Assembly: GCF_001194135.2 (NCBI RefSeq)
Contig: NC_068987.1
Span: 12,889,234 to 12,953,233 of the forward strand
DNA from: Octopus bimaculoides
Taxonomy: Eukaryota
Direction of reading: 5' to 3'
DNA: 64,000 bases
The notes below the pieces were generated by a model. That model was not told where the DNA came from. It searched no databases and saw nothing but the letters and a program-made list of their open reading frames with translations. Made by a program: the position numbers and the translations under genes. Positions 682 through 56,981 of the stretch are shown piece by piece; the first letter of the stretch is position 1, and every line of letters begins with the position of its first letter.

Positions 682-2021
682 NNNNNNNNNNNNNNNNNNN
701 NNNTATTATAGGTATGTATTCACCTATACATTTACGAACATACATGCGTATGCAGGTGTATATATATTCGTGTATTCGTCTGCGTATTTTTTAGTTTATA
801 ATTTTATTCGTTTTATTTTTATCATTGTGTCCTAAAATAGACTCAATTTTTTTAAAATATGATATGATTCTTTTTCTCCTCATTCTTTTTTCTCCGTATC
901 TATATATGTATATCCTATATATACTCCTCTAACGCATTGAGTTGCTCCGGCTTAAAATCGTTTCAGGTGAAAACATTTGAAGCGTGTGGGTCGCGGAGAG
1001 AAAACAACACGATAGCAGTTGCTGATATATATATTTTTTTATTATTATTCTTTACTGTTACTTTCGTAAATCCAAGATTATTCTGCTTGATTAATCATTA
1101 AGAAATATATCATATGTAATAGCTGTCTACTTAAAACGATAAAACAAAGAGATTAACGTTAAAAAAAATGTCTTTAGATTCTTAGACATATAGAAGCGAT
1201 GTAATCGTATAAACGAACTCGTTAAGTCAGTTTTTATGCTGCTTTCTAGGAGAGATTGAAAAAGTTGCTTTCAGCTATCATCTACACCTATTTTAAGTGA
1301 ACAAAAATATATTCGGAGATATACCCTGACGAAGAAAAAACACGTAATAATGTGGAGCTATTTTAATCAACGTAGTCTTTGGGATTCTTGAAACAAAACG
1401 AAACCTTCTTTTACCCCCTAACATATGGGTTTCATTAACAAAATATATGAAACTGTATGATAGACGAAATATGTAAAAGTATTTTTGTTCGTTTGTTTAG
1501 GGTTTTTTGTGGGTGATGGGGATGTTGGATTTTTAACATGAAATACCAGAAATTCAGAAATTCCATGCTATATTCGTATCTTCATTTCATTGTAATCGCA
1601 TATATATTATGAGTATATATATATATATGATACAGATATGTATATNNNNNNNNNNNNNNNNNNNNNNNNNNNNNNNNNNNNNNNNNNNNNNNNNNNNNNN
1701 NNNNNNNNNNNNNNNNNNNNNNNNNNNNNNNNNNNNNNNNNNNNNNNNNNNNNNNNNNNNNNNNNNNNNNNNNNNNNNNNNNNNNNNNNNNNNNNNNNNN
1801 NNNNNNNNNNNNNNNNNNNNNNNNNNNNNNNNNNNNNNNNNNNNNNNNNNNNNNNNNNNNNNNNNNNNNNNNNNNNNNNNNNNNNNNNNNNNNNNNNNNN
1901 NNNNNNNNNNNNNNNNNNNNNNNNNNNNNNNNNNNNNNNNNNNNNNNNNNNNNNNNNNNNNNNNNNNNNNNNNNNNNNNNNNNNNNNNNNNNNNNNNNNN
2001 NNNNNNNNNNNNNNNNNNNNN

Positions 2022-3199: not shown

Positions 3200-3715
3200 C
3201 GTATCTCAAAGGTCTACGGTGACCCTCAGTCTAAGACGTAGTATGCAGCGAAAAGTTGACTTCAACAGCTGAATTACGTGACGATCTGAGCTAGTGTACA
3301 AGAGACAAATCACTTGGAGTAGTAGTTGTCGTACTCAGTTAACTTTATTGCTAAATGACTTGTTCTGGCAGTTATCTACAGCAACAGATTGATGACAGAA
3401 GGCATTGCATTAGTGATGCTGCCAGGAAAGACAAGGACAGAGATGGCATAATATAAAATTTCAGGACCGTAATTCTGCTAAATACTCAAATAATTTGAGC
3501 GTAGATGTTCGTATAAGACTTTGGTGCTTGTCGTTGGCAGTTTAGTAGGAGACGGACAAAACTGTAAATCCTCGTAAGATTTATTCATGAGAACTTGTAC
3601 ATTTTGCAAAACATCGCAAAGAGGATCGGAGTAGCTGTGATCATCTGGAACCAATCTAAAGCCTTTGACATAAATGTCATAATCTGACTGCCTTGAACAA
3701 TCCGTCTTAGCGTGT
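3200..3715 (+). pseudogene. Degenerate L1/Tx1-type LINE reverse transcriptase fragment
   Basis: Manual translation with stops gives KDRDGII*NFRTVILLNT...RFIHENLYILQNI...IIWNQSKAFD, matching the L1/Tx1 RT motifs NFRPITLLNTDYK and LDQSKAFD. Confidence 0.7.
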
Positions 3716-4829
3716 TTTCCTTTGTAATCAGAGTCTATTTGCTTCCACTTTTGTACATTTAATGAGTTTTTCGATAAAAAAGTTTGCATGTTCTTTTTCT
3801 TCTCTTTTTTTTTCTTTTCTACATAATGAGATTAATCATACAAAATTTCGATTTGATGTTCAAAAAAGAAAAGAAAAAGACACCCGAAACAGCGACGCCT
3901 TAAGTGCAGATCGATGATATTATAAAACGGTTTCAGAATGAGTGTCCAACGTTTTGTTTCTACATCAAAGACTAAATAAGAAAAAACTGGAAAGTCTCGG
4001 AATTCTCTGTAATAAACGGAAACAACACCGGAGTGTAACTAGCCGATAATTTAGAGAAATTAGAGCAACAAAGGTCATTCCTCTAATTCTGAAAAATAAT
4101 TAATGGGGACAACTTTGTGAAGGTTTCTGAGTTGTTTTTTTTTTTGTTTTTTTTTCAGAACACTCGCATTTACTAACCGTCGGTTGTTAACTTGCCATCA
4201 TTTTGTGATACGTCTGCTTTCTCTGAAAGATTATCTTCTTACTTTACCCGAATTTCCATCCACGAATTCACACACACACACACACACACAAAGACTCACA
4301 CACACTGTTTTGCTTGAACTTAGGAGGGCAGTTACCCCTCCTCCTCGACTCCCTGCCTTCCACTACGCCCATGGTCGCAATGAATTGCTCTATTGGCAAG
4401 ACACCTTCGTATTTATAATTTGATATAATACGTTTACGTAATACGATATCTTGCCTGAAAGATTCTGACATGTATAAACATAGCAACTCTAATATTGTGA
4501 ATGTACTGATAGAATGCACTGGGAGAAAATTAATTAACATTCCAGATGCACTCTGTAAGAAGCTAACACACCAGCTTCATTAAAATATGACGTTGCTTCA
4601 CAAAATAACAAGCATATCATTTTTTTAAATTCAAAAGCATTCAACTGAAACTTACAGTAGAAGAAATTTCTAAGCGAATCGAGCTCACGACCCGTTTGCT
4701 GAATCCCGTTTCTATCCATTATATTTCAGGTATGTCGTTCATGCACTTGAAAAATAGAATGAGCGTTACACGGCGCCATTTTGCTTTTGAGATTATGTAA
4801 CATATCTAAAATTTGATTATGAGGATATA

Positions 4830-5044: not shown

Positions 5045-5203
5045 CGACGGGCTTCTTTCAGTTCCGTCTACCAAATGCACTCACAAGACTTTAGTCGGCC
5101 TGAGGCTATAGTAGAAGACACTTGCCCAAGATGCCACGCAGTGGGAATGAACCCGGAACAATGTGGTTGGTAAGCAAGCTACTTGCCACACAGCCACTCC
5201 TGC
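4830..5203 (-). mobile_element. CORE-like tRNA SINE, family B, with internal (TA)n
   Basis: The reverse complement has head aggagtggctgtgtgg...gttccgggttcattccc, CORE-like gcatcttgggcaagtgtcttctactatagcc, an internal TA microsatellite and an (aaagagt)n tail. Confidence 0.85.
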
Positions 5204-5653: not shown

Positions 5654-6110
5654 GAGTGGTGAGTTGGCAGAATCTTACCGCACCAGGCTAAATATATAAC
5701 GTCATTTTTTTTTTTTGCCGTCTTTACGTTCTGAGTTCAAATTCCACCGAGGTTGACTTTACCTTTCATCCTTTGAGGTCGATAAAATAAGTACCAGCTG
5801 AGCACTGGGGTCGATATAAGCAACTTATCCTCTACCTCGAAATTGCTGGCCTTAAGCCAAAATTTGAAAGCAATATTATAATAATGTAGGGCAGGCAGTC
5901 AGCTGGTAGAATAGTTAGCACGCGGGACAAAATGCTTTGCAGCATTTCGTCCATCTTTACGTTCAGAGTTCAAATTCTGCCGAGATCGACTTTGCCTTTC
6001 ATCCTTTCGGGACCGATAAAATAAGCACAAGTTGAGTACTGGGGTCGATATAATCGAATTACCCCTTCCCCTGATATTGCTGGCACTGTGCCAAATTTGA
6101 AACCAGTATT
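5654..6110 (+). mobile_element. Tandem dimer of SINE family A
   Basis: Two ~220-bp units with gagytggcagaat...gttctgagttcaaatt...gaggtygacttt...catcctttc...gtcgataaaataagtacc and a tail ending aaatttgaaa. Confidence 0.85.
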
Positions 6111-7831: not shown

Positions 7832-7880
<49 letters not shown>

Positions 7881-8766
7881 NNNNNNNNNNNNNNNNNNNN
7901 NNNNNNNNNNNNNNNNNNNNNNNNNNNNNNNNNNNNNNNNNNNNNNNNNNNNNNNNNNNNNNNNNNNNNNNNNNNNNNNNNNNNNNNNNNNNNNNNNNNN
8001 NNNNNNNNNNNNNNNNNNNNNNNNNNNNNNNNNNNNNNNNNNNNNNNNNNNNNNNNNNNNNNNNNNNNNNNNNNNNNNNNNNNNNNNNNNNNNNNNNNNN
8101 NNNNNNNNNNNNNNNNNNNNNNNNNNNNNNNNNNNNNNNNNNNNNNNNNNNNNNNNNNNNNNNNNNNNNNNNNNNNNNNNNNNNNNNNNNNNNNNNNNNN
8201 NNNNNNNNNNNNNNNNNNNNNNNNNNNNNNNNNNNNNNNNNNNNNNNNNNNNNNNNNNNNNNNNNNNNNNNNNNNNNNNNNNNNNNNNNNNNNNNNNNNN
8301 NNNNNNNNNNNNNNNNNNNNNNNNNNNNNNNNNNNNNNNNNNNNNNNNNNNNNNNNNNNNNNNNNNNNNNNNNNNNNNNNNNNNNNNNNNNNNNNNNNNN
8401 NNNNNNNNNNNNNNNNNNNNNNNNNNNNNNNNNNNNNNNNNNNNNNNNNNNNNNNNNNNNNNNNNNNNNNNNNNNNNNNNNNNNNNNNNNNNNNNNNNNN
8501 NNNNNNNNNNNNNNNNNNNNNNNNNNNNNNNNNNNNNNNNNNNNNNNNNNNNNNNNNNNNNNNNNNNNNNNNNNNNNNNNNNNNNNNNNNNNNNNNNNNN
8601 NNNNNNNNNNNNNNNNNNNNNNNNNNNNNNNNNNNNNNNNNNNNNNNNNNNNNNNNNNNNNNNNNNNNNNNNNNNNNNNNNNNNNNNNNNNNNNNNNNNN
8701 NNNNNNNNNNNNNNNNNNNNNNNNNNNNNNNNNNNNNNNNNNNNNNNNNNNNNNNNNNNNNNNNNN

Positions 8767-9050
8767 CGATATCAGTGAAGAATTTCACTGGAAAAATGTA
8801 CATAAGGTTGCCAAGAATTTATATCTCTCATCGAAGGTCGGTAGCTATCGGATGCTGACGAAGGGAAATAACCCTGAAACCCGGGTCCGTTCGTGCTACG
8901 ATCACGATGAGAGGGATAACTTCCCTTGGCAAAACAAACAGGACACAGTAGTGTGTCGATAAGCCAGCTGGAGGAGATGTCCTCCTGGGGCTAAAGCAAC
9001 AGTAACATCCACCCCTAAGGGTCAGCCACACTTAAGTGACAATACACTTC

Positions 9051-9054
<4 letters not shown>
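8767..9054 (+). mobile_element. Retrozyme-like structured unit carrying a type I hammerhead ribozyme
   Basis: Long rod 8808-8932 closes the hammerhead, with further hairpins at 8773-8790, 8942-8957 and 8970-8985. The unit lies between an N-gap preceded by (TA)n and a (TA)n tract. Confidence 0.65.
8849..8893 (+). ncRNA. Type I hammerhead ribozyme
   Basis: Stem I CGGATG/CGTTCG, core CTGACGA (8855-8861), stem II AGGG-AAATAA-CCCT, GAAAC, CCGG loop, GTC cleavage triplet (cut after 8887). Confidence 0.9.
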
Positions 9055-9091
<37 letters not shown>

Positions 9092-9935: not shown

Positions 9936-10292
9936 AAGCAGATAGAATGTTGTTTTTCCTCGGGGAAATTTTCTTCGAGAATTCTGAGCCTGATTTACTG
10001 ACACAAATCATGAAGTAGAAACATCGAATGCTTTAATTAATCTCATGATAAAACCGTTTTGTTACTTAGTTGACTAACATGAATAGTTTAAAGGCCGGAA
10101 GCCGCCAGTACATTTCACATCAAAAAGATAAGGAGTATAAAATGCAATGAAAACAGCATAAATTAAAAGCACCAAATATAAATCAAACAAATAACAAGAC
10201 TATTGGTAATGTAATCGATCTTGTAGCTTGATTGCATATATAACTCGTTGTTTTCTAACAATCACATTTTCTTAATAGTCTTAGTTACTTTA

Positions 10293-10500
10293 AGGCCGTG
10301 AGCTGGCAGAATTGTTAGCACGCTGGGCAAAGAGCTCGGCGACATTTTGCCCACCATTACGTTCTGAGTTCAAGTTCTGCCGAAGTTGACTTCACCTTTT
10401 ATCCTTTCGAAGTCGACAAAATAAGTACCAGTTGAACACTGTGGCCGATGTAATCGACTGAACCCCTCCCCTGAAATTGTGCCAAAATTTGAAACCAATA
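10293..10500 (+). mobile_element. SINE family A
   Basis: Matches the family A consensus along its full length. Confidence 0.85.
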
Positions 10501-10779: not shown

Positions 10780-10929
10780 GTTGTTGAGCTGTCAGAATCG
10801 TTAATACACTGGGAAAAAATGCTTAGCAGCATTTCTTCCGATTCCACATTCTGAGTTCAAATACGGCTGGGGTCGTGTTTGTTATTCATTCTTTCGGGGT
10901 TGATAAAATGAGTACCAGTTGAGTATGGG
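10780..10929 (+). mobile_element. SINE family A, 3'-truncated at a Penelope-like fragment
   Basis: Head and central segment present; tail replaced by the RT fragment. Confidence 0.75.
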
Positions 10930-11735
10930 GATCTCCGAAATTGAGGAAGATGGTGCGAACCATAAGATTTCCCGCTTCCTGGCCTTAGAATGCTTAGAGT
11001 GTGCGGTTGTAGTGGGTTGACGGGAGTGGGGGCGGGCTTGTAGTTGTTATAGGCTTGGGGTGGCCAGTGGGGCGGCCGAGTGCGATGTGTAGGAGTGTTT
11101 TTTGAGAGCTGTTGGATTGGTGTAGAATGGAAGTAGTGTCCGTAGATTCAAGATTAGTATTGGGAAAGAGATGTGCTGTTTTAGTTTTAAGCTTAGTATT
11201 GGGGGTATAATAGTTTTTTTCGCGAAAACCGCTTTTTTGGAGGATCTAATTCTAATAAGGGGCGTGAGAGTTAAGAATTTCTTCGTTAGCAGATAAGTTA
11301 GAGATTCTGATAGATATGCTTGTGACTACGCTATTAAGGGTAGGCTTAGGGTGATTAGAGGGGATATTTGTATGTTGTAAAGATTGGTTAAGTTTATGGA
11401 AGGGGTGATACAGTCGAGAGTAACGTCTAAGAAATTGGCCAACTTAGTGTCAATTTCGAATGTAATATTCAGGTTATAGTTTTTAAAACTTTTGTGTAAA
11501 GCTTTCTTGGTGCGTTCCACTGACGGTCGAGATAATTTAATTGCTGAAAGGAGTGCATCATCCCTATATAGTCCACTGGAGAGGTTTGGGGAAATATTGT
11601 TTAATTTGAGAGAGAAGGAATAGGCCAACTAGGTCAGTAACCTGGACTGAGTTGGATGTGTCCATAGTTATATCGAATAAATCAAAGAAATCCGTAGATG
11701 AGTTGCGGTCCATCCATTGCAAGCTCATTGGTGAT
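10930..11735 (-). pseudogene. Penelope-like element reverse transcriptase fragment
   Basis: Frameshifted translation: WMDRN...FDITMDTSNSVQVTDLVGLFLLSQI, SGLYRDDAL, NFLDVTLD, RKREILWFAP. These match Penelope-like RT motifs (FDVTMG..ELVGL, GLYRDDGL, IIWFNPP). Confidence 0.8.
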
Positions 11736-11764
11736 CTAAATGTACAACGGCAACAATGTCGGGA

Positions 11765-11915
11765 GACGGAATAAGTCGATTACATCAACCCCAAACGCTC
11801 AACTGGTACTTATTTTATCGGCCCCGAAAGGATGAAAGGCAAAGTGGACCTCGGCCGAATTCGAACTCTGAACATATAAAGATAGTTGAAATGCTGCTAC
11901 GCATTTTGTCCAGCT
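11765..11915 (-). mobile_element. SINE family A fragment
   Basis: Reverse complement of the family A central segment. Confidence 0.8.
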
Positions 11916-13059
11916 GCTTTATATATATGGCATTATTGAGATATCCATGAATGGATGTTATATGATACGACAGTCGAAAATTAGAAAACTACAAAAGAAT
12001 GCTTCTTTCGCAAAAAAATCCATGTAATTGTGGCAAAGTTTACATAAAACTGTGATTTGTTTTGAAACAGAAAAATCATTTCTTCACACATTCCGTATCA
12101 ATCACAGCATTTTATATATATATGCGAAATATTTGGCAAATTATTCGTTAAAGAATCTCAAACATGGGTATTTGTTAGTTGATATGAATTCGCTAGCACT
12201 GAACATAGATAAATACATGTGTTTCTAAATTAAACCTGATATATGTTACGTATAAGTAAGCAAAGAAAGAAAACTGTATGTTAACCTTGTTAAATGAAAT
12301 TGTTGAACAGATATAAAGGTGAACTAATAAGGAATGTGTTTCAGAAAGCTGACAGTGATTGATTAAGCAATAAACGTAGGCCTTGACTACTTACTTAAAC
12401 GTAACATAGTTGTAGAAAAACGAAGAGAAATGTTCCATTCTAAATGTCAAATGGTTAACAATTAGAATCTAAATATGCACTTGTTCTTTTGCCCTAGGTT
12501 GCCACTGATCGTACAGGCATTCCCACTGTGACATTCCAGCAGAGTTTGCAGTGTACCCAGAGCTACTTTATCCAATATTTCCTTCTTTTCTAAGATACTA
12601 AGCTTTTCTTTGAGGAAGATTTGTCTGCTATCTCATCTGTTTCAACATATTGGATATTTTCATTTTTGCAGTCTCTTTAGCTAAAGGGTGAAAAAAAAAA
12701 CAAAGCACTTCCCGGATTATTTTATTCCAATCCTTTAGAAATTTATTTTGAACTTGTCAAGAATAGTTACCCATCTGATACTAGAATTATTTTTCCTCAA
12801 AGTCCCTCCCACCTACGCCCTGCAATATATTGAACCAGTATAACATAAGCTTTTTTTATGAAACCTAAAATAATACAATACTCTCATATATACAAAGAAT
12901 CTTGATCAGTCATGAGACACAGTTCAGTCGATTTGACCTGGATCTGACGCGTCTGCCACATGAGCCCCTATAAAAGTTTACTCCCTTAAATGCATAACTG
13001 AATGAACTAAAAAAAAAAATAACAAATTTCCCTTATCAAACTAGAAAGAGTCTCCAACA

Positions 13060-39507: not shown

Positions 39508-40145
39508 GGTATGGCTGTGTCGCAAGAAGCTTGCTTCCCAACCACATGGTTCCGGGCTCAGTCCCACTGTGTAGCACCTTATGCAAGTGTCTTCTACGAT
39601 AGCTTCGGGCCGACAAAAGCGTTCTAAGAGNNNNNNNNNNNNNNNNNNNNNNNNNNNNNNNNNNNNNNNNNNNNNNNNNNNNNNNNNNNNNNNNNNNNNN
39701 NNNNNNNNNNNNNNNNNNNNNNNNNNNNNNNNNNNNNNNNNNNNNNNNNNNNNNNNNNNNNNNNNNNNNNNNNNNNNNNNNNNNNNNNNNNNNNNNNNNN
39801 NNNNNNNNNNNNNNNNNNNNNNNNNNNNNNNNNNNNNNNNNNNNNNNNNNNNNNNNNNNNNNNNNNNNNNNNNNNNNNNNNNNNNNNNNNNNNNNNNNNN
39901 NNNNNNNNNNNNNNNNNNNNNNNNNNNNNNNNNNNNNNNNNNNNNNNNNNNNNNNNNNNNNNNNNNNNNNNNNNNNNNNNNNNNNNNNNNNNNNNNNNNN
40001 NNNNNNNNNNNNNNNNNNNNNNNNNNNNNNNNNNNNNNNNNNNNATATATAAATATATATATATATATACAACGGGCTTCTTTCGGTTTCCGTCTACCAA
40101 ATCCACTCACAAGGTTTTGGTCTAATGACTGAAACAAGTATAAGA
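39508..40145. mobile_element. SINE family B fragments either side of a gap
   Basis: Plus-strand head at 39508-39630; minus-strand piece at 40068-40120. Confidence 0.7.
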
Positions 40146-40178
40146 AAAAAGATATATATATATATAATAAAAAATAAC

Positions 40179-40416
40179 TGCGCCCTTTTAAAGCCTGGCC
40201 AGGCTCATGGGCCCGGTTTCCCGGTTTCAATGGCGTATGTGTTCCCCAGCTTGACGGGACGCCAGTCCATCGCAGCATAACTTCTTTTTGCCAGATGAGT
40301 AAACTGGAGTAACGTGAAATGAAGTGTTTTGCTCAAGAACACAACGCGTCGTCCGGTCCAGGAATCGAAACCACATTCTCACGATCATGATGCTGACACC
40401 CTAACTACTAAGCCAT
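40179..40416 (-). mobile_element. SINE body C plus tail Y
   Basis: Near-identical in structure to 13892-14137. Confidence 0.85.
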
Positions 40417-40694
40417 GTTTGAGGACGGATAACATCCAGAAACCTAGGTCTGTGAGTATCACGTAAAACTAGAGATGGGAGCAATGACCTTTCTTGCAAA
40501 TAACATATACTTACACAAACTGTGTCGATAGTTAGCTGGAAAAGATTTTTCCTGAGGCTAAAGCAAAAGTATATGGTGCAGTGAATAGATTGTCGTCTAA
40601 ATTACGCTAAAATGAAAATAACACTGACATCTCATTTCAACCGATATATTTACCAAATTCACATCAAAATATCCCGAATTACTAAAGTGTAAAT

Positions 40695-44785: not shown

Positions 44786-45800
44786 ATGTCTGACATCAAG
44801 TTGACTCGGCAAACGAAAAGGCACGCTGTAATCGTTGCTTTAAAAGCACTGCAAAGTGATACAGAGATAGCTCGCTTCCTGAAAGTTACTTGATCCTTCG
44901 TTGTCAAAGTTCAAAAAGAGCTGAAAAATACTGGCGGGAATCCAACATCAGCAGCTAAACACAAAACGCATACACACGTGCCTAATACCATCAGAACACA
45001 TGACTTAATACAAAATGTCCAAGAATTAATCGATAAAAACTCCAGAAAGTCAATCAGAGCTATTGGAAAGGAACACAGGGTTTCAGAATGCATCACCAGA
45101 AGAGGTATGCATGAGGACATCCGCTACATGTCGTATATGACGTGGGGGGATCAGTTTATGTTTGTTGTGAGCAGAAAGAATCGTTCGATCCGTGCAAAGT
45201 GCTTGTTAAACAAGTTATAACACTAAGAGGCTGGAATGCTTTGGGAGAAAAACTTCGACCAAGACCAAAAGTTAAACGGAAGGAAGGGCAGCTGATTATA
45301 CAGAAACCTGAATTAAAATCCATCGGTCATGCATACCATGTTCTAAGTCATTGTGATGGTTCTAGGAGACGTCAGTAATGAGTGGGTTGTCACGCCTCCT
45401 CAATGTTGTTTTACATGGCTTAAGAGTCAATGCCGCTGTCTTCACAGAGATCTTGAAAAAGTTAAGAATATGCAACAGAAGACGGTATGTCTTCCAAGAC
45501 TCTGCGCCGTCTCATATACCTAGGACAATCCAAACGTGCATGCGTGCCAATTTTCATGATCATGTTCTTCCAGACACATGGCCTCCTAACTCACCAGACC
45601 TCAATCCACAGAACAATTACATATGGTACACAGTCAAGAGAGAGGTCAGCCAACACCCCTATAACACAATACAATCTCTCAAGCCTGCCATAAACAGCAC
45701 TATGTCCAAAATTGATAAAGCTCATATGATTCTGATATGTCAATGCTTCCGACCCTATACTGAAGCAGCCATTGGTGCTAACGGTGGTTTCATTGAATAA
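44786..45800 (+). pseudogene. Decayed maT-type (D37D spacing) Tc1/mariner transposase
   Basis: MSDIKLTRQTKRHAVIVAL...EIARFLKV...KSIRAIGKEHRVSE...KNFDQDQK...VFQDSAPSH...WPPNSPDLNPQNNYIW...AIGANGGFIE*. First catalytic D deleted, last D is N, spacing 37. Confidence 0.9.
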
Positions 45801-51330: not shown

Positions 51331-51825
51331 ACTAAACTCATGGCTGGATGAAGACCCATAGACCCCCAAAAACTTAAAAGATTTTGGTGACCACATATAT
51401 ATATAATCCAACATTTACACGGTGACCATATATATATGTAACCCAACATATAAGCCGTAACGTAATTTTTTTGTTTTTCAAAATAAAACAAAAACTAACA
51501 GTAAGATGGATAATAATGTTTATTTTTGTATACTTTCGCTTTATTTATATTTGGAAAGTTTTCTTTTTTTAATTGCAAAGTCTTTGATCAGAGCCCCACT
51601 ATGATACCATGCATACTACGTAATCATTTTTCCGATAATATAAACCACTTCGAATATTATTTTTTGCACAGGGTTTGAGGTATAATGAGCAGATGAAAGG
51701 AAGAGAGAGACAAGTGCTCGAATGAAGTTGTACAAAACAAGCAAGTTCCGAGGGGCAGCAACTAGGATAGAAGCGTTAAAAAACGACGGTGAGTGAGAGA
51801 AGACTGTACGTCTGTGGGTCGGATG

Positions 51826-52040
51826 CTTGAGTGAGCTGGTAGAATCGTTAGTACGCCCGGCAAAATGTTTTGCAGCACTTCGTCCGTATTTATGTTCTGA
51901 GTTCAAATTCTGCCGAAGTCGACTTTGCCTTTCATCCTTTCGTGGGTCGATAAAATAAATACCGGCTGAACCCTGGGGACGATGAATCGACTTACCGCCT
52001 CCCCGAAATTGCTGGCCTTGTGCCAAAATTTGAAACCAAT
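51826..52040 (+). mobile_element. SINE family A
   Basis: Matches the consensus. Confidence 0.85.
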
Positions 52041-52514
52041 AATATTAAACTGCTTAAACAATTAACTAATTATTTACTTGATTAATTGATATTTCAGTGA
52101 ATCGATGTTCTCTTGTATACCTTCAATAAAACAATAACTAATTTGTTATTTAAATGTATGCTGTACCTTATTTTTTTTTCCGTGTGACCTGTTTTCTCTG
52201 ACTATTTTTACATGTGACGTTTTTTCTAAATTCATATATACATAAGTACACACACACACACAAGCATTTATACAGATATATTGTCTAGGCTTTGTTTTTA
52301 AGGTTGCCTTTATGGTCAGTATGTCACGCTAGGTTACTTCAAGGAAAGTAGATAGGTCAAGAACTAAAAATAAGATAAAATAAAATTCAATATATCATAG
52401 AAAAATACCTGAAGCGATAAGTAGGAAAGAACAAGTTTAAACACGCTCACTATATCGCATCTATTGAACCTTCCATTCAGAAAGCACTATAGAAATGAAG
52501 GAATATTTTCGGGT

Positions 52515-55710: not shown

Positions 55711-55924
55711 ATTAAGCTAGTGTTTGGAACATAAATTAACATGAAATTTTAATACAAGATTTTACTTCAAAACAGGCTGTTTGCATCATAGAACTAGGGA
55801 TGGTCCCAGACAATAAAATGACAATTAAACTAGAAACTGGCTTAGCTTCAATAACAAATAATAGCAAAGACCAAGCAGAAGCTATTAACAACCTACTAAT
55901 TGTCACGAAAGTTTGTTTATTATT

Positions 55925-56125
55925 AGAATCGTTAGCACACCGGACAAAATGCTTAGCGGCATTTCGTCCATCTTTATGTTCTGAGTTCAAATTCCATCGA
56001 GGACAACCATGCCTTTCATCCTTTCGGGGTCGATAAATTAAGCACCAGTTACGCAACTGGGGTCGATGCAATCGACTTAATCCCTTCCCCAAATTTGAGG
56101 CCTTGTGCTTCCAGTAGAAAGGATT
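55925..56125 (+). mobile_element. SINE family A
   Basis: Matches the consensus. Confidence 0.85.
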
Positions 56126-56981
56126 ATTACCCCTTTCTTATTTTTTCTGACCAGGCTCCCGTGGTTTTATGGGTTTTTCCACGTGTAACCTTTCCTTTTT
56201 CGAAGCGCCTCCTCCTTTGGGAGTTCTACTTATTTATTTAGCTATTTATTTATCTATTTATTTATTATATCTTTCTCCGTTTTCTTCCTCTGTTTAGACG
56301 AACTTTCCTACCTTTTCGGACAAAACCTTTTGTAACCTTCGTCCTGTCTTTGTCCTTACATGTTTTTAATTGATATTAGCCCTTGTGGCCAATAAAACGA
56401 ATTATTATTATTATTATTATTATTATTATCATTATTATTATTNNNNNNNNNNNNNNNNNNNNNNNNNNNNNNNNNNNNNNNNNNNNNNNNNNNNNNNNNN
56501 NNNNNNNNNNNNNNNNNNNNNNNNNNNNNNNNNNNNNNNNNNNNNNNNNNNNNNNNNNNNNNNNNNNNNNNNNNNNNNNNNNNNNNNNNNNNNNNNNNNN
56601 NNNNNNNNNNNNNNNNNNNNNNNNNNNNNNNNNNNNNNNNNNNNNNNNNNNNNNNNNNNNNNNNNNNNNNNNNNNNNNNNNNNNNNNNNNNNNNNNNNNN
56701 NNNNNNNNNNNNNNNNNNNNNNNNNNNNNNNNNNNNNNNNNNNNNNNNNNNNNNNNNNNNNNNNNNNNNNNNNNNNNNNNNNNNNNNNNNNNNNNNNNNN
56801 NNNNNNNNNNNNNNNNNNNNNNNNNNNNNNNNNNNNNNNNNNNNNNNNNNNNNNNNNNNNNNNNNNNNNNNNNNNNNNNNNNNNNNNNNNNNNNNNNNNN
56901 NNNNNNNNNNNNNNNNNNNNNNNNNNNNNNNNNNNNNNNNNNNNNNNNNNNNNNNNNNNNNNNNNNNNNNNNNNNNNNNNN

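What the first reader, a model, noticed from the sequence alone, without database searches (positions are those of the whole stretch)
8767..9054. Retrozyme-like unit: complete hammerhead ribozyme at the tip of a 125-nt rod
Seen: every hammerhead core nucleotide is present (CUGACGA, GAAAC, GUC). Stem I extends through a small bulge into a long imperfect rod: gtagc/gctac, ggtc/gatc, ctctcatcg/cgatgagag, ttgccaag/cttggcaa (8808-8932). Three more hairpins follow or precede it. Loop II (AAAUAA) recalls the CAAAUA loop of the Schistosoma SM-alpha hammerhead, and stem III is the short palindrome ACCCGGGU. Established: metazoan non-LTR retrozymes are short tandem repeats with type I hammerheads, often cleaving as dimers and yielding small circular RNAs. 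Inference: this ~290-nt unit may be one monomer of such an element, and the adjacent 886-N gap may hide further tandem copies. I cannot tell whether this family is already described in cephalopods.
Basis: partly seen in the sequence, partly recalled or inferred. Interest (0 to 1): 0.85.

Follow-up and report, generated by a model that had tools for sequence, protein, structure and literature searches.

The report
Hammerhead ribozyme in an octopus-type repeat
The window holds a real, textbook-shaped animal hammerhead self-cleaving RNA motif inside a short non-coding repeat, most likely a copy of a retrozyme-like mobile element; this kind is already known in many animals, so it is a new example, not a new kind.

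Summary
On the + strand, 8849-8893 is a complete type I hammerhead. It has CUGACGA, GAAA and GUC, a 6-bp helix I, a 4-bp helix II with a 6-nt loop, and the palindrome ACCCGGGU as helix III. The predicted cut is after C8887. Helix I continues through a UAU/U internal loop into a rod (8808-8932). My descriptor scan expects about 0.003 such motifs by chance in this window. A covariance model built only from four experimentally validated animal retrozyme hammerheads finds it as the single significant hit (24.7 bits, E about 9e-5). Rfam itself gives no hit, and position 10.1-11.1 is A-U instead of the usual G-C. A second, old and ribozyme-dead copy lies at 40414-40631. It keeps helix III self-complementary and keeps all 10 pairs of a downstream hairpin despite six substitutions, including two compensatory pairs. 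No tandem copy is visible. The 886-N gap is most simply an unresolved (TA)n tract. The mussel ribozyme with the same kind of helix III cleaves as a single unit, so a dimer is not required. Best reading: a solo or terminal unit of a non-LTR retrozyme / Sm-alpha-like element. It is a new member of a known kind, of modest interest.

The parts
8767..9054 (+). Visible part of the repeat unit (5' end cut by the assembly gap). Non-coding, 46.5% GC, strongly self-paired.
   Evidence: Sequence; fold z = -4.35; no Pfam or protein homologues for its open frames; GC.
8773..8790 (+). 5' hairpin CAGUGAA/UUCACUG with loop GAAU.
   Evidence: Minimum-free-energy and centroid folds.
8808..8932 (+). Imperfect rod that closes helix I of the hammerhead. 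It has 42 pairs, 3 of them G.U on the + strand. The minimum-free-energy form (-50.6 kcal/mol) uses an alternative pairing, 8849-8853 with 8885-8889, which buries the cleavage site. The hammerhead-constrained form is -43.3 kcal/mol.
8849..8893 (+). Type I hammerhead ribozyme. Helix I 8849-8854/8888-8893; core CUGACGA 8855-8861; helix II 8862-8865/8872-8875 (A10.1-U11.1); loop 2 AAAUAA 8866-8871; GAAA 8876-8879; helix III palindrome ACCCGGGU 8879-8886; C17 = 8887, with the predicted cut between 8887 and 8888.
   Evidence: 24.7 bits, E about 9e-5, full-length alignment with no non-standard pair. Two 45-nt cores co-fold into a double hammerhead with an 8-bp helix III (-30.5 kcal/mol against 2 x -12.8).
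8846..8848 (+). Loop 1, 5' side (UAU), opposite U8894. It is an asymmetric internal loop six pairs from the core, the position of the loop1-loop2 tertiary contact in canonical type I hammerheads.
   Evidence: The comparison with the Schistosoma ribozyme is from my own knowledge and was not tested here.
8942..8957 (+). Hairpin GACACA/UGUGUC. Copy 2 keeps it as ACACA/UGUGU with a shorter loop.
   Evidence: manual reading.
8962..8992 (+). Two-tier hairpin AGCC...GGAGGA GAUG UCCUCC...GGCU. It is the best conserved module between the two copies (77% against 61% overall). All 10 pairs are kept in copy 2, with 2 compensatory G-C to A-U changes and 2 C-to-U changes that give G.U on the + strand. It overlaps the stretch that weakly resembles the mussel retrozyme.
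9055..9087 (.). (TA)16 directly abutting the 3' end of the unit. It is either the insertion target or the 3' tail.
7837..7880 (.). (TA)22 on the left edge of the 886-N gap (7881-8766).
40414..40631 (+). Second, old copy of the family, about 61% identical. It lacks everything 5' of the hammerhead, where the head of a tRNA-like SINE on the minus strand abuts it. The core is inactivated (C3 to U, C/A at 10.1/11.1). Helix III is ACCUAGGU, still self-complementary.

Best explanation
The locus is one copy of a short, non-coding, hammerhead-bearing retroelement of the animal 'non-LTR retrozyme' / Schistosoma Sm-alpha type. It is either a solo unit or the 3'-terminal unit of an array whose upstream part is lost in the assembly gap.

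Proposed mechanism (inferred from the published model, not shown here):
1. Read-through transcription of + strand units yields RNA in which the type I hammerhead folds: helix I 6 bp, helix II 4 bp, with loop 1 (UAU/U) docking on loop 2 (AAAUAA).
2. The weak palindromic helix III forms either as a 2-3 bp hairpin or as an 8-bp intermolecular helix between two ribozymes (double hammerhead).
3. [quoted passage not shown]
4. Unit-length RNA is closed by a host RtcB-type ligase into a small circular RNA. The circle settles into the more stable rod form, which buries the cleavage site and keeps the circle intact.
5. Copies are reverse-transcribed from the 3' end by a retroelement enzyme, most likely that of Penelope-like elements, and inserted at or next to (TA)n.

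This particular copy may be an inert descendant. Its core is intact, but it carries A10.1-U11.1.
For: - Motif and helices are present and far above chance.
- A covariance model trained only on coral, mussel and axolotl retrozyme ribozymes that were shown to self-cleave picks 8849-8893 as the only significant hit.
- The dimensions equal the published canonical animal type I architecture (PMC4209133). They differ from the minimal ribozymes of autonomous Penelope-like elements.
- The unit is non-coding, at least 288 nt, 46.5% GC and highly self-paired, as described for retrozymes (PMC7229834).
- The strand is indicated by three G.U pairs in the rod on the + strand. The + strand rod folds at -50.6 kcal/mol against -44.5 for the minus strand.
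- It is a family. Copy 2 shares the 3' part up to about the same end and lacks the 5' part, as expected for 3'-primed reverse transcription.
- Between the copies, helix III changes CCGG to CUAG and stays palindromic. The 8962-8992 hairpin keeps 10 of 10 pairs despite 6 substitutions, which points to selection on + strand RNA structure.
- The double-hammerhead fold is the predicted optimum for two cores. The stable alternative rod that hides the cut site is the behaviour described for such circular RNAs.
- A natural active axolotl ribozyme has U.U at 10.1/11.1, so A-U need not be lethal.
- A decayed reverse-transcriptase-like relic, whose relatives carry a CxC...C finger and a GIY-YIG-like segment, lies 1.9 kb away. 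This fits the co-occurrence with Penelope-like elements reported in bioRxiv 10.64898/2026.07.22.740005.
Against: - No tandem repeat is visible at either copy.
- Only two copies could be examined, and they are very diverged (about 61%).
- No related sequence was found outside the window, because no cephalopod genome was searchable.
- Rfam gives no hammerhead hit even at E<=10.
- G10.1-C11.1, described as highly conserved, is A-U here.
- The active fold is 7.3 kcal/mol less stable than the alternative rod.
- (TA)n tracts are so common here, 45 in 56 kb, that the flanking tracts prove little about target choice. The 3' (TA)n could equally be a LINE-type tail.
- Cleavage, circles and mobility are all untested.
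Confidence: 0.68

Rival explanations
1. It is the 3' terminal repeat (pseudo-LTR) of a 5'-truncated autonomous Penelope-like element. The coding part would be hidden in the gap, or lost, and the ribozyme would process the element's own transcript.
For: Penelope-like elements carry type I hammerheads in their terminal repeats near the 3' end, and some clades insert preferentially into microsatellites, (TA)n among them (PMC8557442; PMC4209133). (TA)n lies on both sides of the gap-plus-unit stretch. A reverse-transcriptase-like relic of a probable Penelope-like family lies nearby at about 10900-11730. Retrozymes are themselves reported to derive from these terminal repeats.
Against: Ribozymes of animal Penelope-like elements are described as minimal: helix II 7-8 bp, helix I 4-5 bp, an extra base between positions 9 and 10.1, and no helix III or loop contacts. 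This one has the canonical 6/4 architecture with loops. No coding remnant is present in 8767-8850. The nearby relic is on the opposite strand, tail-to-tail, and separated by microsatellites and a SINE. An 886-bp gap cannot hold a full ORF.
Confidence: 0.14
2. It is a dead fossil of such a family, or an ordinary LINE-mobilised SINE with a (TA)n tail that happens to carry a hammerhead. The ribozyme no longer cleaves and no circular RNA is made.
For: A10.1-U11.1 replaces the conserved G-C. The second copy is 61% identical and has a mutated core, so the family looks old. No tandem partner is visible. Another SINE in the window also ends in an A/T-rich tail followed by (TA)n. The inactive rod fold is more stable.
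Against: Every core base of copy 1 is intact and all three helices pair without mismatch. This is unlikely after long neutral decay at the divergence seen between the copies. Compensatory changes indicate past selection on the RNA.
Confidence: 0.12
3. It is a chance hammerhead-like motif inside an unrelated hairpin-forming repeat, for example an inverted-repeat (MITE-like) element.
For: Both strands fold well (z = -4.35 and -3.69), as for any DNA palindrome. Rfam is silent. At E about 9e-5 per 128 kb searched, a Gb-sized genome would give a few such hits by chance (my extrapolation).
Against: The chance expectation in the window is 0.003. Features outside the descriptor also fit: an asymmetric loop 1 six pairs from the core, a 6-nt A-rich loop 2, and a palindromic helix III. 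Copy 2 keeps the palindrome through a double change. The repeat extends about 120 nt beyond the hairpin and is not itself palindromic.
Confidence: 0.04
4. It is a domesticated cis-acting ribozyme that regulates a host transcript (intronic or 3'-UTR), like the amniote intronic hammerheads or the rodent Clec2 ribozyme.
For: Such cases exist (PMC6155905).
Against: No host exon or gene was detected around it. It lies in microsatellite- and repeat-rich sequence. It has a decayed paralogous copy elsewhere in the window, as a mobile element would.
Confidence: 0.02

Closest known systems
Metazoan non-LTR retrozymes (Cervera & de la Pena 2020, PMC7229834), in particular the Mytilus galloprovincialis retrozyme Mg353
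   Same: Both have a canonical type I hammerhead with a 6-bp helix I, a 4-bp helix II and an 8-nt self-complementary helix III (ACGCGCGU in mussel, ACCCGGGU here). Both are non-coding, self-paired units of a few hundred nt with GC below 50%. There is a weak, position-matched similarity about 60 nt 3' of the cut site, (C)UG(U/G)GUCGAU..GCUGG(A/U)GGAGAU plus a hairpin. Its z is 3.4-4.0 against shuffles, while coral and axolotl controls give z of 0.5 or less.
   Different: No tandem arrangement is seen here. The 10.1-11.1 pair is A-U. Loop 2 is 6 nt here against 5 in mussel. Circular RNA and cleavage have not been shown. Overall sequence is unrelated outside the ribozyme and that one module.
Schistosoma mansoni Sm-alpha SINE-like element with its type I hammerhead
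   Same: It is a short dispersed or tandem non-autonomous retroposon carrying a type I hammerhead. From my own knowledge, it also has a 6-nt A-rich loop 2 (CAAAUA against AAAUAA here) and a 3-nt/1-nt internal loop six pairs up helix I.
   Different: There is no detectable sequence homology. The Sm-alpha comparison rests on memory and was not tested with a tool. A Pol III promoter was not examined because the 5' end is missing.
Minimal hammerheads in the pseudo-LTRs of Penelope-like elements (Cervera & de la Pena 2014, PMC4209133)
   Same: Type I topology, a palindromic 15.2-16.2 region suited to dimeric action, a position near the 3' end of a retroelement, and association with microsatellite insertion sites.
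   Different: Those have a long helix II (7-8 bp), a short helix I, an extra base after A9, and no helix III or loop-loop contacts. They flank an RT-GIY-YIG ORF. None of this is seen here.
Amphibian satellite 2 / axolotl retrozyme hammerheads
   Same: A palindromic loop in a very weak helix III, a possible double-hammerhead mode, and a natural deviation at 10.1/11.1 (U.U in HHR_Amex2).
   Different: Helix III here has one more G-C pair and resembles invertebrate ribozymes that cleave as monomers. Copy number and tandem organisation are unknown here.

Membership tests
Hammerhead ribozyme, type I (canonical metazoan form) | Conserved core C3U4G5A6N7G8A9 ... G12A13A14 ... A15.1-U16.1, H17 | tested here: met
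   CUGACGA 8855-8861, GAAA 8876-8879, U8886, C8887.
Hammerhead ribozyme, type I (canonical metazoan form) | Three helices around the core with helix I open (5' and 3' ends leave through helix I); helix I 6 bp, helix II 4 bp, helix III 1-2 bp with a 2-4 nt palindromic loop (PMC4209133) | tested here: met
   6 bp / 4 bp / AC-CCGG-GU. The full-length covariance model alignment has no non-standard pair.
Hammerhead ribozyme, type I (canonical metazoan form) | Highly conserved G10.1-C11.1 pair | tested here: not met
   A8862-U8875. It is still a Watson-Crick pair. A natural active axolotl variant has U.U there.
Hammerhead ribozyme, type I (canonical metazoan form) | Match to the curated Rfam model (Hammerhead_1) at its gathering score | tested here: not met
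   No hit at the gathering score or at E<=10 on 294 nt and 65 nt. The reason is unknown and no positive control was possible.
Hammerhead ribozyme, type I (canonical metazoan form) | Significant score with a covariance model of experimentally validated animal type I hammerheads | tested here: met
   Model R1, built from coral, mussel and two axolotl ribozymes, gives 24.7 bits, E about 9e-5 (rough calibration), and is the only significant hit in 64 kb.
Hammerhead ribozyme, type I (canonical metazoan form) | Loop 1 - loop 2 tertiary contact nucleotides | tested here: inconclusive
   The geometry fits: a UAU/U internal loop after 6 bp and a 6-nt loop AAAUAA. The specific conserved contacts could only be compared from memory.
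Hammerhead ribozyme, type I (canonical metazoan form) | Site-specific self-cleavage | not testable with these tools
   Needs in vitro transcription of 8767-9054 as monomer and dimer.
Non-LTR retrozyme | Head-to-tail tandem repeats, each unit with a type I hammerhead | tested here: inconclusive
   No second unit downstream. Upstream is an 886-N gap whose left flank is (TA)n, as for 12 of the 21 gaps. Copy 2 is not tandem. Solo monomers of retrozyme families are reported in vertebrates.
Non-LTR retrozyme | Unit of about 170-400 nt, GC below 50%, no coding capacity, no LTR/PBS/PPT | tested here: met
   At least 288 nt visible, 46.5% GC. No Pfam or protein homologues.
Non-LTR retrozyme | Highly self-paired predicted RNA | tested here: met
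   -94.1 kcal/mol, z = -4.35.
Non-LTR retrozyme | Multiple genomic copies forming a family with compensatory variation | tested here: met
   Two copies in 64 kb. Compensatory changes occur in helix III and in hairpin 8962-8992.
Non-LTR retrozyme | Expression as linear and circular unit-length RNA | not testable with these tools
   No transcriptome of the source organism was available.
Penelope-like element pseudo-LTR | Flanks an RT + GIY-YIG ORF on the same strand | tested here: inconclusive
   Nothing coding in 8767-8850 and the upstream sequence is a gap. The only RT-like relic is on the opposite strand at about 10900-11730.
Penelope-like element pseudo-LTR | Minimal hammerhead architecture (long helix II, short helix I, bulged base after A9, no helix III) | tested here: not met
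   Canonical 6/4 helices, no bulge, and helix III present (compared).

The most novel reading that the evidence does not exclude
The octopus-type unit and the mussel retrozyme may share a conserved RNA module about 60 nt downstream of the cleavage site: (C)UG(U/G)GUCGAU..GCUGG(A/U)GGAGAU plus a hairpin. It is also the best conserved and covarying part between the two copies here. If real, molluscan retrozymes would carry an ancient functional element besides the ribozyme, for example a recognition site for the mobilising reverse transcriptase or for the ligase. It would have been retained since bivalves and cephalopods split, or been exchanged horizontally, and the family would still make circular RNAs in cephalopods.
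Probability: 0.15. Interest if true: 0.6.

Novelty: new member of a known kind. Interest (0 to 1): 0.35.

Why it matters
If confirmed, it adds cephalopods to the animals that carry canonical hammerhead retrozyme-like elements. It would give a defined sequence for testing self-cleavage and circular RNA formation in an animal group known for unusual RNA biology. It also gives a second molluscan family to compare with the mussel retrozyme, which might reveal conserved non-ribozyme modules needed for mobilisation. It does not change the current picture of hammerhead biology. Type I hammerheads in short repeats are known from cnidarians to amphibians, and Rfam hammerhead matches were already counted in a squid genome.

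Tried and rejected
- **Rfam 15** on the whole window at gathering score, and on 294-nt and 65-nt sub-regions at E<=10. There was no hammerhead hit, only a meaningless 11-bit ClpQY_promoter match. I could not run a positive control, so I built my own model instead.
- **Finding other copies through spurious ORFs.** The 67-aa minus-strand ORF and the 64-aa plus-strand open frame were searched against the 5.8-billion protein set. Nothing was found.
- **Pattern scans** with CTGANGAAGGGNNNNNNCCCTGAAAC. Viral contigs gave 0 hits. Metagenome contigs gave 9 hits, all with unrelated flanks. One of them, L002, might be an unrelated hammerhead and was not pursued.
- **Coding content.** Pfam on the unit's frames and on eight other open segments gave only a DDE_3 transposase fragment at 45366-45797.
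- **Is the nearby RT-like relic a Penelope-like element?** Pfam gave nothing on the stitched relic or on its homologues. The link rests on reading the translation of L012 and on the precomputed PF26215 labels.
- **5' part of copy 2 beyond the SINE.** No similarity was found. I rejected the part of the first local alignment that overlapped the SINE head as spurious.
- **MITE reading.** Rejected because the repeat extends well beyond the palindrome and is shared asymmetrically between the copies.
- **First alignment of the four reference ribozymes (A2).** It was structurally out of register, so I discarded it in favour of A3.

Full report
**1. What is in the sequence**

The region starts directly after an 886-N assembly gap (7881-8766) and ends at a (TA)16 tract (9055-9087). 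On the + strand I read the following.
- Helix I, 5' strand: CGGAUG, 8849-8854.
- Core: CUGACGA, 8855-8861.
- Helix II: AGGG 8862-8865, loop AAAUAA 8866-8871, CCCU 8872-8875.
- GAAA: 8876-8879.
- Helix III: the self-complementary octamer ACCCGGGU, 8879-8886.
- C17 is 8887.
- Helix I, 3' strand: CGUUCG, 8888-8893.

Beyond helix I there is an asymmetric internal loop (UAU 8846-8848 opposite U 8894). The pairing then continues as an imperfect rod to 8808/8932. Further hairpins lie at 8773-8790, 8942-8957, 8962-8992 and 9011-9022.

**2. Is it more than chance?**

- The 288-nt unit folds at -94.1 kcal/mol with z = -4.35. The minus strand gives z = -3.69.
- The rod alone is more stable on the + strand (-50.6 against -44.5 kcal/mol) and uses three G.U pairs there, which points to the + strand as the RNA.
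- A simple hammerhead descriptor finds exactly one hit in the window. In 300 random sequences with the window's dinucleotide statistics, the expectation is 0.04 for relaxed helix lengths and 0.003 for the observed 6/4/2.
- Rfam 15 reports no hammerhead at the gathering score, or at E<=10 on 294 nt or 65 nt. I cannot explain this and could not run a positive control.
- I therefore took four ribozymes that were shown to self-cleave (coral Amil224, mussel Mg353, axolotl Ax353 and Ax330) from the supplement of PMC7229834. I aligned them, adding one N to loop 2 of the coral and mussel sequences to keep the helices in register, and built a covariance model.
- With filters off, that model finds 8849-8893 as the only significant match in the window. 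It scores 24.7 bits, E about 9e-5 (rough calibration), aligns end to end, and has no non-standard pair. The runner-up scores 12.5 bits and lacks the core.
- Extrapolated to a Gb-sized genome, a few hits of this score could arise by chance. The family evidence below therefore matters.

**3. Fit to the known architecture**

Cervera and de la Pena describe canonical metazoan type I hammerheads as follows: helix I of 6 bp and helix II of 4 bp interacting through their loops, and helix III with a 1-2 bp stem capped by a small palindromic loop (PMC4209133). The motif here matches on every count. It does not match the minimal ribozymes of autonomous Penelope-like elements. Those have helix II of 7-8 bp, helix I of 4-5 bp, an extra base after A9, and no helix III.

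One deviation is A10.1-U11.1 in place of the highly conserved G-C. A natural axolotl retrozyme ribozyme has U.U at that place and still cleaves, so this need not abolish activity.

**4. Monomer or dimer?**

- As a hairpin, helix III is marginal; AC(CCGG)GU evaluates at +2.9 kcal/mol. As an intermolecular duplex the octamer gives -14.9 kcal/mol.
- Two 45-nt cores are predicted to form a double hammerhead at -30.5 kcal/mol, against 2 x -12.8 for separate monomers.
- However, the mussel ribozyme has an equivalent helix III (ACGCGCGU) and cleaves from a single cloned repeat at about 0.1 per min. Dimeric action is possible but not required.
- The most stable fold of the rod pairs 8849-8853 with 8885-8889 and buries the cut site. 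The catalytic fold costs 7.3 kcal/mol more, not counting tertiary contacts. A stable resting form with a transient active form is the behaviour described for ribozyme-bearing circular RNAs. I offer this as inference.

**5. A family, not a singleton**

BLAST and nhmmer find one more copy at 40414-40631 (nhmmer E = 1.5e-7).
- It is old, about 61% identical.
- It begins at the hammerhead, where the head of a minus-strand tRNA-like SINE abuts it, and it runs to about the same 3' end as copy 1.
- Its core is inactivated (C3 to U, and C/A at 10.1/11.1).
- Its helix III reads ACCUAGGU. The central CG has become UA, so the octamer is still self-complementary.
- In hairpin 8962-8992 all ten pairs survive six substitutions. 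Two G-C pairs became A-U, and two C-to-U changes give G.U on the + strand only.

With only two sequences this is not a statistical proof. It is, however, what selection on a + strand RNA structure would leave. Shared 3' ends with a missing 5' part fit reverse transcription primed at the 3' end.

**6. Tandem copies and the gap**

- Nothing downstream of 9054 resembles the unit, and copy 2 is not tandem either.
- The left edge of the gap is (TA)22.
- 12 of the 21 gaps in this window have a TA tract on at least one side, and there are 45 TA tracts of at least 12 bp in 56 kb.
- The simplest reading is that the gap is an unresolved TA microsatellite, perhaps together with the missing 5' end of the unit.
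- The unit therefore sits in or next to (TA)n. Some Penelope-like clades show insertion bias for microsatellites, (TA)n among them (PMC8557442). But another SINE here also ends in an A/T-rich tail followed by (TA)n, so the tract could be a tail rather than a target.

The retrozyme hallmark of tandem units is thus neither shown nor excluded. Solo monomers of retrozyme families are reported in vertebrates (bioRxiv 10.64898/2026.07.22.740005).

**7. Coding capacity and neighbours**

- The unit's open frames have no homologues and no Pfam match.
- About 1.9 kb downstream, on the opposite strand (roughly 10900-11730), lies a frameshifted relic. Its translation reads ...GLYRDDALL...FLDVTLD...SNHPKP...RKREILWFAP....
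- It has 65 homologues, many labelled PF26215 (HTH_animal).
- In one of them (L012) the frame continues into a CxC...CPxxGxC finger and a GIY-YIG-like start.
- That is the domain order of Penelope-like elements with a zinc-finger linker. Pfam did not confirm it here, so this is a reasoned guess.
- The relic is tail-to-tail with the ribozyme unit and separated from it by microsatellites and a SINE. I treat it as an independent insertion that merely shows a possible mobilising family is present.

**8. Relation to the mussel retrozyme**

- Both octopus-type copies show a weak similarity to Mg353 at a matching position, 58 nt after the cut site in mussel against 67-73 nt here. The shared stretch is (C)UG(U/G)GUCGAU..GCUGG(A/U)GGAGAU followed by a hairpin.
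- Global alignment of the first ~110 nt after the cut gives z = 3.4 and 4.0 against dinucleotide shuffles. The coral and axolotl controls give z = 0.5 and -0.6. Mussel against coral reaches 2.6, so the null is somewhat liberal.
- A two-copy profile hits only the mussel sequence, at 7.9 bits and E = 0.0026 in a tiny database.
- This stretch is also the best conserved part between the two copies (77%).
- The hairpin registers do not coincide exactly.

I regard this as a lead, not a finding.

**9. What is known already**

Type I hammerheads in short repeats are documented from cnidarians to amphibians, including a mollusc. The giant squid genome paper counts 235 Rfam Hammerhead_1 matches. I found no paper describing such an element in octopus. 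I also could not verify the source organism of the window.

**10. Verdict**

This is a canonical animal hammerhead in a retrozyme-like or Sm-alpha-like repeat family, seen here as one intact and one decayed dispersed copy. The tandem arrangement, cleavage, circular RNA and the mobilising enzyme remain untested. It is a new member of a known kind and of modest interest.

Noticed in passing
window 10900-11730 (minus strand): Frameshifted relic of a reverse-transcriptase-like ORF (GLYRDDALL...FLDVTLD...SNHPKP...RKREILWFAP). It has 65 homologues, many labelled PF26215 HTH_animal. In one homologue's locus (L012 4000-4950) the frame continues into a CxC..CPxxGxC finger and a GIY-YIG-like start, then breaks at a (TA)n tract. 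It is probably a Penelope-like element relic, but Pfam did not confirm this.
   Followed up: partly
window 40170-40420 (minus strand): tRNA-derived SINE (B-box-like GGTTTCGATTCC) with an A/T-rich tail followed by (TA)n. Its head abuts the 5' end of hammerhead copy 2. A different SINE-like repeat lies at 40070-40110 and again near 5050-5110.
   Followed up: no
window 10285-10470 (+): Another SINE-like repeat (ggccgtgagctggcagaattgttagcacgc...). Related translated fragments (..YRPRKDERQS..NSEH..) recur at about 11756-11950, 51619-52044 and 55739-56137.
   Followed up: no
window 45366-45797 (+): Tc1/mariner-type DDE_3 transposase fragment (Pfam PF13358, E = 3.8e-8).
   Followed up: partly
whole window: There are 21 N gaps (7868 N in all), and 12 have a (TA)n tract on at least one flank. 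There are 45 (TA)n tracts of at least 12 bp in 56 kb, plus long CA, GA, GATA, ATT and AAC-type microsatellites. This is a short-read assembly that breaks at microsatellites.
   Followed up: partly
window 8954-8985, copy 2 40523-40553, mussel retrozyme Mg353 (PMC7229834 supplement): Shared stretch (C)TG(T/G)GTCGAT..GCTGG(A/T)GGAGAT plus a hairpin, at a similar distance (58-73 nt) from the hammerhead cut site in octopus-type and mussel units. The statistics are weak (z 3.4-4.0; nhmmer 7.9 bits).
   Followed up: partly
L002 (JAAUYI010018678.1) 900-1020, minus strand: A metagenome contig picked up by the core pattern has CTGATGA-AGGG..CCCT-GAAAC followed by a long inverted repeat (CCAATTACC..GGTGATTGG). 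It may be an unrelated hammerhead with a long helix III.
   Followed up: no
L012 gene calls 3378-4007 and 5734-5979: The called genes contain in-frame stop codons under table 11, so that contig was probably called with another genetic code or is a eukaryotic contig with decayed ORFs.
   Followed up: no
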